Source of the DNA: Ruditapes philippinarum
Lineage: Eukaryota
Reading direction: 5' to 3'
DNA: 64,000 bases
NCBI RefSeq assembly: GCF_026571515.1
Contig: NW_026859581.1
Coordinates: 310,001-374,000, forward strand
Shown: one piece after another, positions 41,764 to 47,472 of the stretch
How the letters are laid out: every line of letters starts with the position of its first letter
Position numbering within the stretch: position 1 is the first letter of the stretch
The notes under the pieces: model-generated
Databases searched by the model: none
Told to the model about the DNA's origin: nothing
The model's input: only the letters and a program-made list of their open reading frames with translations
Program-made: the position numbers and the translations under genes

Positions 41764-43990
41764 ATGGCTACAGGTGGACAAATAAATACAGATATTCTTT
41801 CTGATGAAATATTTGATATCCTATGTTCAATGTGTAAACATCAAGGCATAAACACTGAAGCTGATAAATTCTGTGTAGATTGTCATGATTATTTCTGTTT
41901 TAACTGTGTCAACGTTCACAGTAAAGTTCCTATGTGTCTTGGTCACAAGATGTCGGATAAATCTCAGGTCAAGTCAGGAACCAGCAAGGGTTTTCCGAGG
42001 GCACCAGCAGAGAGATGTGACAGACACAGTCATAAACACGTCGATATGTACTGTCAGAACCATGATAAAGTTGGCTGTTCTACATGTATGGCAGTTGATC
42101 ATAGGTAGGTTTTGATAATTTGATTATGGAATTGCTTTGGGTATTTTTGTGTTGTTAAAAGGATATAATTTCATTTTATCTATGTTAACAGTAGCTATTT
42201 GGTTGTAAGTTTGTAAGTCACACCAACACTGTTATGGTCATAGAGAGATTTTCTAGCTTTCGTAGTGAAGGAAGACCTCGGATATCACTATTTCAGGCAT
42301 CATCGGGCACCCAAGTAGACATTATGTGAGCTATGTGGATAGCGTCTGCACATGATAGAATTCAAAGTCCCTGACAGGATCCGAACCCTTATAAGTGAGT
42401 GGCAAGTATTTTAAAAATAACAACCTCATATGTTACATTAAATACAACATTCATTCTCAGAAGCACTAAAACATAAAATTCTGACGTTTTATAAGCTAGT
42501 CGAAAATTATTCCTCACATGGAAGATTCCAAGGCCCCTGGTAGGATTCAAACCCACATCAGTGAGTAGAAGTGTGTGACCAACCTCCTATCTCAGATGAA
42601 CATGAACATAAAAGTCAATAAACCTCTTATTCCTTTCAGATCATGCAAGGATACATTCTATATACCAGAATTCATCAAAAACAACATATACCAAAAACCT
42701 TCAAGAGAAATTCACACAAAACTTACGGAAATAAGCAAGACCCTTGCAGAACAAGCTAGCAAATCCAAACAGGATAAACAGAGGCTGCTAAAAAGAAAGG
42801 CAGAGTTATTGACTGATATCAGAAATTTCCGAAAAGAAATCAATGACCAACTTGACAAGCTAGAGAAAAATTCTGTAGATGAGATAGAAGATAAAGTCAA
42901 ATGTCTTGAGAGCAAGATCGAAGAGGGTCTCAAACAGCTACAAGCACATAAAGACAAAATCACATCAGCCAATAAAAAGTTAGCATTTTTTAACCAGAAT
43001 CAAGCTGACGTGTTTGTTAATATGAAGATGGCAGAGGATGCTGCACATCTTGCCAACCAATGCATGGAAGACACGAAAATGAAGAGTACAGTAGCAGACA
43101 TGGAGTTTCAACCTGATAGAACAATTCTGACACAACTTGAAAAAAGTAGTACACTCGGCTTACTAACAGAGAATCCTACAAAGATAGCCAGCAGTTTATT
43201 TCAGATAAGAAGGGAACTATCATATTGTGTAAAAGTAAAGTCGGATAACAAAGATTGCGATATCACATGTGCCTGTTATCTGAAAGATGGTCAAATATTT
43301 CTAGCTGATAAAAACAACATGAAGCTTAAACAGATACATGATTACGACTATACTGTCACAGACCACTGTGATCTACCTGGCGAACCATGGCAAGTGTGCT
43401 CAATCAATACAGCAGGTGTAGCATTAACTTTGCCATTACAAAATGAGGTTCATTTTATTTCTGCGGGAAGAAAATTGAAAGCAATATATAAGATTAAAAC
43501 TGATTTTGAATGTTATGGTCTTGCATACACAAGCAATAATTTATATATTTCAGACGGCAACACATCAGTGTATATGTATTCATTGTCTGGTAGGAAACTA
43601 AAACAGTTTAGTAAGACCCAATCGGGACAAAAGCTGTTTTCTGACATAAGCAGTCTAGCTGTCCGTCAAGATGCTACAAGGATTTATGTTGCTGATTTTT
43701 ACAATGGAGTGATAGTACTGGACAACAATTTTCAGGTTATTACAACATATAATGGTAGGCAATTAATGGGGGCTTCATGTTGCTATATCTCTGAAGCAGG
43801 AAGTGTGCTGGTATCAGGAGGAAACTCAAAAAATGTTGTACAGTTTACATCTGATGGTGAGCTGATAGGGGATGTTATAAAAGCCAATAAAAGAAGAAGT
43901 GGGATTAAGTCAGTTTGCTGTAATCAACAAATGTCTAAGATGTTTGTTTGCAGATCTCATGAAAACAATATTGAAGTATATGATATTTAA
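41764..43990 (+). CDS. TRIM/NHL-like protein copy 4 (two B-boxes, coiled coil, NHL-like propeller), ~563 aa
   Basis: join(41764..42104,42640..43990). Exon 1 is 341 bp as in copy 1; frame checked; intact. Confidence 0.9.
42220..42590 (-). mobile_element. Degenerate SINE copy plus a partial second copy in the TRIM copy 4 intron (relics also in the introns of copies 2 and 3)
   Basis: ggtcatagagagattttctagcttt..gaaggaagacctc..gggcacccaagtaga..gtgagtggcaagt, similar to the SINE at 810-1404. Confidence 0.6.
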
Positions 43991-44459
43991 TCACTTTTTT
44001 TGCTATCTTCTTTTTGGTTCAAATTTAAAATAGAATATTTAAACAGCCAATACAAAGATAAAAAAAATTCTTAAAAATCTTGATAGACAAAATGTGGCTA
44101 TGAACATGTTTATAGATGTAATGATGCTATTTAAATTCACTGTGAGAAAAACAAGAGGGATTTTGTAAAAAAATATATTTTTATTATCATCTACATAAAT
44201 ATTATAAAAAATAATTCTTTGTACATTTCAAAATGTCGTTTACATACTAGTAAATGGTTTTATCAAGTAGAATTATAATATTTGAAACAAACAATACAAT
44301 TTTTTGTTTGAAATTTAAAGTTTCAATATCTTTACTGTGTAACGTCAGCGGCGAGTGGCGGCGTGGCCGAGTGCTTATTGAGTCTGACTAGTTTTCTCAG
44401 GATTGCTGACCGCGTGGGTTGATCCTGTCAGGGGCAAGCCGTTGTTTTCTTGAGCAATA

Positions 44460-46440
44460 AACATCAAACGTAAATCTAAAATTACCCTGTCTGTCACCGA
44501 CTTATATACATGTATTATCTTAAAAAACTCTGGTAAACATGCGATGTTATCACGTCTTACTTCCCTTTCATTATCATCTCTGAAAATCTTAGACGCGGAG
44601 GCAGATAATATAGTTATTCAAACAGATCCTTTATATACAGCAGCTTATCTTATTCAAAGTTATACTCAGCACGTCTTAAGACCTCATATCGACAACACTT
44701 CTGACCACAACAGGTATTTCCTAAAAGTAACCTTTCTTAATAAAGGTATCGATTTCATCGATTTATCAAGTATTTTTCGTGATAAACGTGTCACTAATTC
44801 AGTTCCTTTATACTTCAAAAACTCCGAGATACCAATTATTTGCTATAAATATAAGAAACCTGTTAGAAATATCATATTTAATTACAACAAAGTGGTTTCT
44901 GACTTAGATATTCAGTCTAATACTCCAACAATTTGAGACTGAAATACTTCTAAATTCTGTAATTCAGATTTTGGCCATATAATCACTGGTAATTTTGATA
45001 TAATTGCAGACAAAAGAATTCGTAACTTATTCTTGAAAGGACCTAAATACAGAATTCCTTCTGAGATTGATTTTTATGCTTGTCGTGGTCAGATTGCTGA
45101 ATCTATAGAAGATGTTTCGGTCAAATGGTGTCGCCGTGAAAATGCGGATAGTAATGCTCTAGTTACATGGAAACGTAACATCTTTAAAATTATTGATTCA
45201 CGTATTAATTTTTATCGTGGAAATGAACATCTTTTGCCACCTAAACCAAGACTTACTTTAAGACATCTGAAAAAAGATATTCTAGCTTTTCATTCTAAAT
45301 TTGTTTTGGTGCCAGCGGACAAGGCGGCTAATAATATTATAATTGTATGACGAATCCATTACATTAACGTTTTGCATAAGGAACTTAATAGTACTAATGC
45401 GTATTCTAAAACCTCTGCCTTCGAAAAAGACATTGTAAACAATCATATTACTTATATTTCCAATTTTAAAGTCCAAATTAATGAAAAAGAACTCAAACTT
45501 CCTATTACGTATTGGATTCCTAAATTACATAAAAAACCTTACAAAGCCAGATTCATTGCTAATTCTACATCTTGCACTACTAGTAAACTTTCTATTTTAT
45601 TGACGTCTTGTTTGACTGCCATTAAAACACATGTAATTAGATATTGTGATAAAGTCTATGAAAACACAGGCAAACATCTCTTTCTGGTGAAATCTTGGAT
45701 AAATTCAAAACTAAGAATTTTCAAGCTTCAACTGTCAGTACATACGATTTTTCTACACTTTATACAACTTTGCCACATAAATTAATCAATGATGAACTAA
45801 TTTCCTTAATTCAGAAAACTTTTGCACGGGAAATAGTTACCTTTCTAACATGTAATTCTAACAAAGCTTTTTTTACTAACGGTATTGTTAAACATTATAC
45901 TATGTGGACCTGTGACGAAGTTTGTAGAGCACCCTCTTTTCTTTTAGACAACATTTATGTCAGGTTTGGTAATACCCTATTTAAACAGATCATAGGAATT
46001 CCTATGGGTACTAATTGTGCACCCCTGGTCGCCGATTTGTTTTTGTACTGCTATGAAAGAGACTTTATGTTGAGTCTCTCTGAAGATAAACATCATGATG
46101 TTATAGTCGCATTTCATAATACTTCCAGATACCTTGATGATATTTTTAATTTAGATCATTCTTATTTGATCGAATGGTGTCTGACATTTATCCGCATGAA
46201 CTACAACTTAATAAAACGAACTCTTGAAATTTTAGTACCTTCATATTACTATCGACAACAATTCTATTCACACGAAAATCTATGATAAACGAGATGACTT
46301 TGACTTTTGTATAGTTAATTATCCATATTTAGATGGAGACGTACCCCATGCAACATCTTACGGGGTTTATGTTTCTCAATTATTAAGATTCGCTAGAGCT
46401 TGTAGCAACGTAAAGGATTTCAACGAGCGGAATATTTTTT
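44460..46440 (+). mobile_element. Penelope-like retroelement (Naiad-type RT), 5'- and 3'-truncated, with three in-frame TGA at Cys positions
   Basis: GHIITGN..KGPKYR, VPADKAANN, YWIPKLHKKPYKARFIA, YDFSTLYTTLPH, GIPMGTNCAPLVADLFL, RYLDD, YDKRDDFDF..SYGVYVSQLLRFARAC. TGA at 44934, 44940 and 45348. Frameshifts at ~45684 and ~46165. Confidence 0.92.
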
Positions 46441-46563
46441 TCATAGACTTTTGGACCCAAAACCTTTTTATTTCCTTTCATTGATTTTCAATGATTACCT
46501 TTTAAGGAATTATTTTATGAAATGTGCCCTTTAACAATAAAGTCTCTATTTTAAACTTGTAAA

Positions 46564-47472
46564 ATTTTATGGTGAGCATTAGTCGCCGTTTTGTCCCGTC
46601 CGTTCTTGTACGGGAACCTTTCAAACTGGCTTTTTTGGGAAATATCCATTTCATTTTGTAAACGTACTTAAGGGGAACATTGCTTTGGTCAAATAGGTCT
46701 CAATGAGTCAAAGAAAAAACATAAGTAATCCATAATCCGTCCTTGTCCCTATCTTTGGGAAAAACTTTGAAACACACAAGAGGTTTAACATGAACTTTCG
46801 GTAAATAAAATCTCATTGAGTAGAAGTGCAGTGCAGAAGAACCATAACTCTGTCTTGGCTAGCTTTGAAATTATTTCCCTTTGTTCATTTTTACACTTTG
46901 AACTTTGCCCGGAACATAACTCTAAAACTATAAGAGATATCAACATGAAATTTTGTAGGTAGATAGATGTCATTGTATTGTAAGTGCAGTGCAAAAGAAC
47001 TATAACTCTGTCTTGCCAAATTTTGGAGTTATTGCACTTTGTTCATTCTTACACTTTGAACATTGTCCGGGACATAACTCTAAAATTATATGAGATATCA
47101 GCATGAAACCTTGTAAGCAGATAGATCTCATTGAGTAGAAGCGCAGTGTAAAAAAAATCACTCTGTCTTACGTTATTTTGGAGTTATTGCCCTTTGCTCA
47201 TTTTTACATTTTGAACTTTGTCCGGGACATAACTCTGAAACCATAAGAGATATCAACATAAAACTTTGTAGGAAGATTGCTCCCATTAAATAGAAGTGCA
47301 ATGCAAAAGAACCATAACTCTGCCTTGCTTAATTTTGGTCATAGTTATTGGCCTTTGTTCATTTTTACGCTTTGAACTTTGTCTGTGACATTACTCTGAC
47401 ACTACATGATGTATATTTACCTGTGTCCAAAACCTATTCGGGGAGCATTACCCGGTTCAACCGGTTCTTGTT
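46564..47472 (+). mobile_element. Helentron-associated non-autonomous element (HINE-like) with ~157-bp central tandem repeats, copy A
   Basis: Repeat unit aacatgaaactttgtaggtagatagatctcattgagtagaagtgcagtgc...; 3' end ggggagcatt...ttcttgtt; 5' part garbled relative to copy B. Confidence 0.75.

What the first reader, a model, noticed from the sequence alone, without database searches (positions are those of the whole stretch)
44454..45690. Retrotransposon that apparently encodes a selenoprotein: three in-frame TGA codons, all at cysteine positions
Seen: ORFs 44544-44936, 45033-45350 and 45372-45785 share one frame, which is open from 44454 to ~45684 (~410 codons) except for three stops. All three are TGA: PTI-TGA(44934)-D-TGA(44940)-NTSKFCNSDFGHIITG and DKAANNIIIV-TGA(45348)-RIHY. 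There is no TAA or TAG despite the AT-rich context. Known: in related Penelope-like RTs these sites are a CxC motif before GHxxTG and the Cys after DKAxNN, and some Naiad-clade Penelope-like elements are reported to use UGA as selenocysteine there. Inference: the parent family has a U-x-U metal/redox motif, so its activity would depend on host Sec machinery and selenium supply. Standard annotation would discard it as a pseudogene. This copy is dead (later frameshifts; GIY-YIG end and 3' UTR missing), so no SECIS can be shown here.
Basis: partly seen in the sequence, partly recalled or inferred. Interest (0 to 1): 0.85.

Follow-up and report, generated by a model that had tools for sequence, protein, structure and literature searches.

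The report
Dead copy of selenocysteine-coding Naiad retrotransposon

Summary
Frame 44454-45683 has 410 codons and three stops, all TGA (44934, 44940, 45348).

Window 44460-46439 is a fragment of a ~4.25 kb Naiad-clade Penelope-like element. It is cut at both ends and frameshifted. The family has more than 1,400 copies in this 1.41 Gb genome.

Fuller copies show an N-terminal GIY-YIG endonuclease, a CxC motif, GxKY, DKA and RT in one frame of about 1,065 codons. Inside that frame the only stops are TGAs.

Four TGAs are fixed in the family and lie on cysteines invariant in distant Naiads: the Cys before GIY, the first CCHH Cys, the first CxC Cys, and the Cys 8 residues after DKA. The window's second TGA (44940) is private; other copies read TGC. 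The motif is therefore U-x-C, not U-x-U.

Variants shared between copies are mostly synonymous (35:16, pN/pS 0.12), also downstream of the TGAs. A SECIS_1-like hairpin overlaps the ORF end, and tRNA-Sec genes are present.

Craig et al. [quoted passage not shown] What is new here is a Sec codon in the CxC motif and a SECIS whose 3' core reads UAAU, not UGAU, in over 99% of copies.

First readers of this scan flagged the same family on other DNA of this genome. Sec insertion itself is not shown.

The parts
44460..46439 (+). Internal fragment of a Naiad-clade Penelope-like retrotransposon. It corresponds to roughly codons 274-941 of the ~1,065-codon family frame. The 5' part (endonuclease) and the 3' part (RT thumb, stop, SECIS, 3' UTR) are missing.
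   Evidence: About 96% identical over this span to 30+ other loci. The fuller copies extend about 1.15 kb further 5' and 1.09 kb further 3'.
44934..44936 (+). Family-fixed TGA at the first Cys of the CxC motif; a candidate Sec codon not reported by Craig et al. 2021.
   Evidence: TGA in 29/30 aligned copies and in 99/100 listed pattern matches. Cys in 17/17 distant homologues. Also TGA in an old, diverged copy, L053.
44940..44942 (+). Private TGC-to-TGA mutation at the second Cys of CxC. It is an ordinary nonsense mutation of this dead copy.
   Evidence: TGC in 29/30 copies. Of 100 listed pattern matches, only this window's copy reads TGA.
45033..45053 (+). GxKF/Y motif (LKGPKYR), diagnostic for PLEs.
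   Evidence: Translation and alignment with homologues.
45318..45326 (+). DKA motif, the Naiad form of the PLE DKG motif.
   Evidence: definition of the motif in PMC8557442.
45348..45350 (+). Family-fixed TGA at the Cys 8 residues after DKA. This is the same Sec site reported in all four published Naiad selenoprotein families.
   Evidence: TGA in 30/30 copies and in 100/100 listed of 223 pattern matches. Cys in 19/19 distant homologues. Published site.
45681..45682 (+).
   Evidence: Pairwise alignment with a fuller copy.
45695..46282 (+). RT core, including YLDD at 46130-46141, read in a shifted frame. It is further broken by a 1-bp deletion after 46164 and a 13-bp deletion after 46238.
   Evidence: weak Pfam RVT_1 match, E 0.053.
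46225..46227 (+). Fourth family TGA, at a variable (mostly Ser) site between RT6 and RT7. The family is polymorphic here, TGA or TCA.
   Evidence: TGA 18, TCA 9 of 30 copies. Ser in 97 of 110 closer homologues that cover the site. Window sequence.

Best explanation
Window 44460-46439 is a dead copy of a high-copy Naiad-clade Penelope-like retrotransposon. It is truncated at the 5' and 3' ends and frameshifted.

The family's single ORF runs: N-terminal GIY-YIG endonuclease with CX4CxxC and CCHH fingers, a KR-rich block, CxC, GxKY, DKA, then RT. It is interrupted only by UGA codons.

Four UGAs are fixed in the family and replace invariant cysteines: the Cys before GIY, the first CCHH Cys, the first CxC Cys, and the Cys 8 residues after DKA. 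A fifth UGA, at a variable Ser site, is polymorphic. A last UGA about 22 nt before the SECIS-like hairpin most likely acts as the real stop.

Inferred mechanism: the UGAs are read as selenocysteine by the host's tRNA-Sec machinery, directed by the SECIS-like hairpin that overlaps the end of the ORF. This is as proposed for the published clam and spider Naiad selenoproteins.

Of the three TGAs in the finding, two are these family Sec codons. The third (44940) is a private nonsense mutation.

Shown: the anatomy, the fixation of the TGAs, their pairing with Cys, purifying selection across the TGAs, the SECIS-like hairpin, and the tRNA-Sec genes. Inferred: actual Sec insertion.
For: - Copies and anatomy: about 2,284 first-look candidates; 47 scored matches of 83-100% identity, the 30 fetched copies at 93-100%. 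The unit is about 4.25 kb, with partial tandem/pLTR arrangement.
- Frames: up to 1,065 codons with only TGA inside, and all Naiad motifs present.
- TGA tallies: 20 copies TGA at each of the two endonuclease sites (the remaining rows mostly lack this region, which is 5'-truncated away); 29/30 at CxC-1; 30/30 at DKA+8. Genome-wide patterns give 99/100 and 100/100.
- Cys pairing: distant Naiad proteins have Cys at these columns in 9/9, 9/9, 17/17 and 19/19. The family has TGA at 4 of only 10 conserved-Cys columns.
- Selection: variants shared by 3 or more copies are 35 synonymous to 16 non-synonymous (pN/pS 0.12, p = 6e-13). Singletons are 135:320 (pN/pS 0.65; Fisher p = 8e-8). In the RT part, downstream of all four fixed TGAs, the counts are 22:8.
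- SECIS: Rfam SECIS_1 matches of 31.9-35.4 bits (gathering score 35) in 5/5 fuller copies, on the sense strand, overlapping the TAA. The minimum-energy fold has the SECIS shape.
- Host machinery: two tRNA-Sec genes at 78.8 and 78.7 bits.
- Age: an old copy, about 71% identical in DNA, keeps TGA at all four Cys sites.
- True stop: many homologues end at or a few residues after the position of the last TGA.
- Precedent: Naiad selenoproteins with Sec at three of these same sites (PMC8557442).
Against: - The 3' side of the SECIS core reads UAAU in 1,435 exact pattern matches and UGAU in only 9. The SECISearch3 paper gives the conserved core as UGAN/KGAW (PMC3753652), so the family lacks the conserved G.
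- Most copies score just under Rfam's gathering threshold.
- The SECIS helices show almost no covariation because the copies are too similar.
- None of the first 30 fetched copies has a frame open from the start codon to the end.
Confidence: 0.8

Rival explanations
1. The UGAs are decoded, but not as selenocysteine. Translation would pass them by near-cognate readthrough (Cys, Trp or Arg) or by some SECIS-independent route, and the hairpin would be a relic.
For: The SECIS core lacks the conserved G: UAAU in 1,435 copies against UGAU in 9 (consensus rule). Scores lie around the Rfam threshold.
Against: Four or five successive low-efficiency readthroughs would yield almost no full-length protein. 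Even so, the ORF shows strong purifying selection. The UGAs sit only on invariant Cys, the classic Cys/Sec exchange. The hairpin otherwise fits SECIS_1 end to end, at the expected place.
Confidence: 0.1
2. The TGA-bearing family cannot code for protein. Its TGAs would be inactivating mutations of one master copy, and the copies would have been spread in trans by a separate Cys-coding Naiad.
For: No fully intact copy in the first 30 loci. The SECIS core is non-canonical.
Against: Shared variants have pN/pS 0.12, also downstream of the TGAs. All four TGAs hit invariant Cys columns. A protein search with a distant Cys-type Naiad returned only this TGA family among 46 scored hits. An old, diverged copy already has the four TGAs. 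The 60-80% identical relatives in other assemblies have predicted proteins that begin just after the DKA+8 site, as expected if they also carry a stop there.
Confidence: 0.07
3. The three TGAs are chance decay of an ordinary pseudogene copy.
For: One of the three (44940) is exactly that.
Against: The other two are fixed across hundreds of copies. Chance that three stops fall on conserved-Cys columns is about 3.5e-7.
Confidence: 0.01

Closest known systems
Naiad_Scon (Sinonovacula constricta) selenoprotein-coding Naiad PLE, Craig et al. 2021, PMC8557442
   Same: N-terminal GIY-YIG Naiad architecture. UGA at the Cys before GIY-YIG, at the first CCHH Cys and at the Cys 8 residues after DKA. An extra UGA at an unconstrained RT6 site. 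SECIS at the ORF end (compared).
   Different: This family has a further fixed UGA at the first Cys of the CxC motif. Its RT6 UGA is polymorphic with TCA. Its SECIS overlaps the TAA instead of lying 1-21 bp after the stop, and its 3' core reads UAAU.
Naiad_Mmer (Mercenaria mercenaria), same paper
   Same: The three Cys-site UGAs. A SECIS overlapping the first non-UGA stop, with a UGA shortly upstream that is thought to act as the stop. The geometry here is the same: TGA about 22 nt before the Rfam match, and TAA inside it.
   Different: Naiad_Mmer has three Sec codons and none in CxC or RT6. Its upstream UGA lies 7 bp from the SECIS.
Spider Naiads (Naiad_Sdum, Naiad_Smim)
   Same: Multi-Sec Naiad proteins with Sec at the pre-GIY Cys and the DKA+8 Cys.
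   Different: The spider elements place Sec in the CX2-5CxxC finger. Here that finger keeps Cys. The paper judges the spider and clam cases to be independent origins.
Selenoprotein P of bivalves (processive multi-UGA decoding)
   Same: Several UGAs are read in one mRNA under a 3' SECIS. Craig et al. cite it as the host context.
   Different: It is a host gene unrelated in sequence, and it has canonical SECIS elements.

Membership tests
Naiad clade of Penelope-like elements | GIY-YIG endonuclease N-terminal to the RT, with CX2-5CxxC and CCHH fingers | tested here: met
   Fuller copies show C-x4-C-xx-C, then GIY-YIG with the CCHH positions, upstream of the RT. The window copy lacks this part through 5' truncation.
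Naiad clade of Penelope-like elements | KR-rich block, CxC motif and GxKF/Y motif between the endonuclease and the RT | tested here: met
   The window translation shows *D* followed by KGPKYR. The family reads U-D-C. Homologues have CxC in 17/17.
Naiad clade of Penelope-like elements | DKG motif changed to DKA | tested here: met
   DKA at window 45318-45326. DKA in most aligned homologues.
Naiad clade of Penelope-like elements | PLE-type insertions: 5' truncation, partial tandems forming pLTRs, body of 3.4-4.4 kb | tested here: met
   Unit of about 4,247 bp with the first ~350 bp repeated after the unit, and many 5'-truncated copies. Exact-pattern counts fall from the 3' end (1,444) to DKA (223) to CxC (127). 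The patterns differ in length, so this gradient is only rough.
Naiad clade of Penelope-like elements | No canonical hammerhead ribozyme in the pLTR | tested here: met
   No hammerhead or twister match at E up to 1 in five loci, or at E up to 10 in the 3' region of one fuller copy (L006).
Naiad clade of Penelope-like elements | IFD insertion between RT3(A) and RT4(B) | not tested
   The length of this region was not measured against canonical PLEs.
Selenoprotein-coding Naiads | In-frame UGAs fixed in the family at conserved Cys positions | tested here: met
Selenoprotein-coding Naiads | Eukaryotic SECIS at or after the ORF end | tested here: inconclusive
   SECIS_1 matches of 31.9-35.4 bits against a gathering score of 35, with AUGA and apical AAA present. 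The 3' core reads UAAU instead of KGAW in over 99% of copies. SECISearch3 was not available.
Selenoprotein-coding Naiads | Host has Sec-decoding machinery | tested here: met
   Two tRNA-Sec genes at 78.8 and 78.7 bits, cut-off 47. SBP2, EFsec and the other factors were not searched.
Selenoprotein-coding Naiads | Selenocysteine actually inserted | not testable with these tools
   The family ORF ends after the RT thumb with no endonuclease there. The endonuclease is at the N-terminus.

The most novel reading that the evidence does not exclude
This family may use a naturally non-canonical SECIS. The invariant A.G sheared pair of the kink-turn core would be replaced by A.A (3' UAAU instead of UGAU), yet the element would still support decoding of four or five UGAs, including a previously unreported Sec in the CxC motif. 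If so, current SECIS search rules (UGAN/KGAW) miss functional elements, and a redox- or metal-binding U-x-C site would be part of a retrotransposon's machinery.
Probability: 0.35. Interest if true: 0.7.

Novelty: new member of a known kind. Interest (0 to 1): 0.45.

Why it matters
Selenoprotein-coding transposons have been described only once, in four Naiad families (Craig et al. 2021).

This genome holds a further family of well over a thousand copies. It adds three things:
- A new Sec position, the first Cys of the diagnostic CxC motif.
- Population-style evidence that the reading frame is under purifying selection across the UGAs.
- A SECIS whose core departs from the accepted consensus in over 99% of copies.

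The last point gives a natural test case for how strict the SECIS core rule really is. Each of the many 5'-truncated copies also scatters a SECIS-like hairpin through the genome, and these are possible raw material for new host selenoproteins.

For annotation, the family shows that TGA-interrupted RT frames in such genomes should not be dismissed as pseudogenes. The window copy itself is dead and ordinary.

Tried and rejected
- Pfam on the four window ORF pieces gave only a weak RVT_1 match, E 0.053. An earlier call failed on a wrong frame.
- No full-length consensus was built; per-site tallies and copy-by-copy comparison were used instead.
The 99%-identical Logan protein P0151 and the relatives from other assemblies could therefore not be placed on DNA, and the host species stays unidentified.
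- I looked for a Cys-coding sister family in this genome with a distant Naiad protein. All 46 scored hits, including the two that looked divergent, were this same TGA family with internal deletions.
- I looked for a second, canonical SECIS in the 3' region at E up to 10 and found none. There is no SECIS in the window copy.
- The best SECIS_1 hits in the whole genome (39.6-41.6 bits) seemed at first to show a canonical ancestral core. Pattern counts (9 against 1,435) show they are rare G variants picked out by score, and the one L051-type copy is unique. The ancestral state is unresolved.
- Covariation in the SECIS helices: 0 pairs with changes on both sides in the RNAalifold consensus structure. 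By eye, one further candidate pair that RNAalifold left out goes from A-U to G-C in a single copy and is broken in four others (alignment). The copies are too similar to be informative.
- ARAGORN found no tRNA in the GC-rich stretch just 5' of the fragment.
- The supplementary files of Craig et al. are not held, so there was no direct comparison with Naiad_Scon or Naiad_Mmer.

Full report
**Observation**

The frame that starts at window 44454 runs for 410 codons to 45683. It contains exactly three stops, all TGA, at 44934, 44940 and 45348. The other two frames of the same stretch contain 22 and 56 stops. The open frame ends because this copy has a 16-bp deletion between 45681 and 45682 relative to other copies. 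The RT continues in another frame from 45695 and includes YLDD at 46130-46141.

**What the stretch is**

A DNA search of the window's own genome (1.41 Gb, 15,874 contigs) with 44454-46450 gave about 2,284 first-look candidates. The 47 scored matches are 83-100% identical, and the 30 copies fetched for comparison are 93-100% identical; nearly all of the longer ones match query positions 7-1986, that is window 44460-46439.

Comparing the fetched loci with each other shows a unit of about 4,247 bp. Its first ~350 bp recur directly after the unit. This is the partial-tandem, pseudo-LTR layout typical of Penelope-like elements. Many copies are 5'-truncated.

The window copy lacks about 1.15 kb at the 5' end and about 1.09 kb at the 3' end. 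No other piece of the element lies in the 64-kb window. Relative to a fuller copy it also has:
- a 6-bp insertion near 44507-44512;
- a 1-bp deletion after 46164;
- a 13-bp deletion after 46238.

Downstream, 46440-46735 is unique DNA. From about 46763 an unrelated tandem repeat begins.

**Anatomy of the family**

When only TAA and TAG are counted as stops, several copies have frames of 900-1,065 codons. The likely start is a Met shortly before the first zinc finger. The protein reads, in order:
1. a C-x4-C-xx-C finger;
2. a GIY-YIG endonuclease with the CCHH positions;
3. a KR-rich block;
4. the CxC motif;
5. GHIITG and KGPKYR (the GxKF/Y motif);
6. DKA;
7. the RT motifs and thumb.

This is the permuted, N-terminal-endonuclease architecture that defines the Naiad clade (Craig et al. 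2021, PMC8557442). No hammerhead or twister ribozyme was found, which also fits Naiads. The endonuclease is missing here, but through 5' truncation.

**The TGA codons**

In a MAFFT alignment of 30 oriented loci, using the codon numbering of one fuller copy (L006), the tallies are:

| Site (L006 codon) | Position in the protein | Tally |
|---|---|---|
| 130 | Cys before GIY | TGA in 20 copies; most others are unaligned flank from 5'-truncated copies |
| 141 | first CCHH Cys | TGA in 20 copies; same caveat |
| 430 | first Cys of CxC | TGA in 29/30 |
| 432 | second Cys of CxC | TGC in 29/30; the only TGA is the window copy |
| 568 | Cys 8 residues after DKA | TGA in 30/30 |
| 866 | between RT6 and RT7 | TGA 18, TCA 9 |
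| 1050 | near the C-terminus | TGA in 26 |
| terminal | final stop | TAA in 27 |

Genome-wide exact-pattern searches agree. Of 223 matches around the DKA+8 site, all 100 listed read TGA. Of 127 matches around CxC, the 100 listed read TGA at the first codon in 99 and TGC at the second in 96. The window's own copy is the only one with TGA-GAC-TGA.

**Pairing with cysteine**

A full HMMER search with the RT piece found 14,886 relatives. Twenty long ones, aligned with the family protein (X placed at each TGA), have Cys at the following columns:
- column 130: 9/9;
- column 141: 9/9;
- column 430: 17/17;
- column 432: 17/17;
- column 568: 19/19.

Only ten columns in the whole protein are conserved cysteines, and the family has TGA at four of them.

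Column 866 is variable. It is Ser in 97 of the 110 closer homologues that cover it, so TGA there derives from TCA.

Many homologues end at or a few residues after column 1049. The TGA at 1050, which lies about 22 nt before the SECIS-like hairpin, is therefore most likely the true stop. Craig et al. argued the same for Naiad_Mmer.

The closest relatives in other assemblies (60-80% identity) are predicted proteins whose N-termini project to codons 570-621, just after the DKA+8 site. Only distant relatives (28-37% identity) read through with Cys. This suggests, but does not prove, that a whole subclade carries a stop there.

**Is the frame used?**

I classed differences among copies in the codon context of one copy, without building a consensus, and masked non-homologous flanks.

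| Class of variant | Synonymous | Non-synonymous | pN/pS |
|---|---|---|---|
| Private (one copy) | 135 | 320 | 0.65 |
| Shared by 3 or more copies | 35 | 16 | 0.12 |
| Shared, RT part only (after all four fixed TGAs) | 22 | 8 | 0.09 |

Shared variants arose in replicating lineages. Their excess of synonymous changes is significant (binomial p = 6e-13 against neutrality; Fisher p = 8e-8 against the private variants).

The lineages that produced these copies were therefore under selection for the protein encoded beyond the UGAs. This argues against a non-coding family spread in trans. A search with a distant Cys-type Naiad protein returned only this TGA family. An old copy about 71% identical in DNA already has TGA at all four Cys sites.

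**SECIS**

Rfam SECIS_1 matches all five fuller copies tested. The matches are on the sense strand, score 31.9-35.4 bits (gathering score 35) and overlap the TAA stop. It is the only hit in the 3' region even at E up to 10.

The minimum-energy fold gives helix I, an 8+8 internal loop holding AUGA, a 10-bp helix II and an apical AAA with a mini-stem (z = -2.6).

There is one deviation. The 3' side of the core reads UAAU, whereas the SECISearch3 paper gives the conserved core as UGAN/KGAW (PMC3753652). This is the family state: 1,435 exact pattern matches have A and only 9 have G.

The genome's best SECIS_1 hits (39.6-41.6 bits) are just these rare G variants of the same element. They are probably chance back-mutations picked out by score. 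Old and young subfamilies both carry UAAU, so the selection on the ORF described above operated with this core.

From my own knowledge of kink-turns, the changed pair is the second (2b.2n) sheared pair. It is the more tolerant of the two when an L7Ae-type protein binds. Whether SBP2 accepts it is unknown.

The host has two tRNA-Sec genes. The window copy has no SECIS because its 3' part is missing.

**Comparison with what is known**

Craig et al. 2021 reported Naiad selenoproteins in two clams and two spiders, with three or four UGAs each. All four families have UGA at the Cys before GIY-YIG and at the Cys 8 residues after DKA. The clam families also have UGA at the first CCHH Cys, and Naiad_Scon has one more at an unconstrained RT6 site. 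Each has a SECIS at the ORF end.

The family here has all of these features, plus a fixed UGA at the first CxC Cys. The paper does not list that site. No later paper on the subject was found.

I therefore file this as a new member of a known kind. The published consensus sequences could not be compared and the host species could not be named. If the host is one of the published clams, the family may already be in Repbase.

First readers of this scan flagged the same family and its SECIS on other pieces of this genome. Their suggestion of a twister ribozyme in a Naiad pseudo-LTR found no support in this family's 3' region.

**Limits**

Sec insertion is inferred, not shown. I did not build a consensus, an ancestral sequence or a repaired frame, and I do not single out any copy.

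Noticed in passing
window 42575-43990 (+): A 471-codon open frame directly upstream of the element, with a coiled-coil-like N-terminal half and a C-terminal half that looks like NHL/beta-propeller repeats. It is probably an exon of a TRIM-NHL-like host gene and is unrelated to the element.
   Followed up: no
window 46763-47400 and beyond: A high-copy tandem repeat. Matches to other arrays restart at offsets of roughly 310 bp, with 5,703 first-look candidates at 72-88% identity elsewhere. It begins about 320 bp after the Naiad fragment. Its short ORFs repeat a CPGQSSKCKNEQ-like peptide on the minus strand.
   Followed up: partly
window 44340-44455: A GC-rich stretch of about 110 bp immediately 5' of the fragment. 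It looks tRNA- or SINE-head-like, with a GGTTGATCC box-B-like word, but ARAGORN calls no tRNA.
   Followed up: partly
L047, L050 (G000:C6009:98150-98211, C7497:81315-81376) and 7 other places: Nine copies of the element carry the canonical UGAU in the SECIS core instead of the family's UAAU. They are the best SECIS_1 hits in the whole genome, which makes them natural material for a side-by-side functional test.
   Followed up: partly
P0236: A 65%-identical relative of the RT is deposited as a protein of a 'Candidatus Thiodiazotropha endolucinida' MAG. That organism is a clam gill symbiont, so the contig is almost certainly host (lucinid clam) contamination in the MAG.
   Followed up: no
family copies, codon before the DKA+8 TGA (window 45345-45347): A synonymous GTA/GTT (Val) polymorphism splits the copies roughly in half. 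It is a convenient subfamily marker right next to the Sec codon.
   Followed up: no
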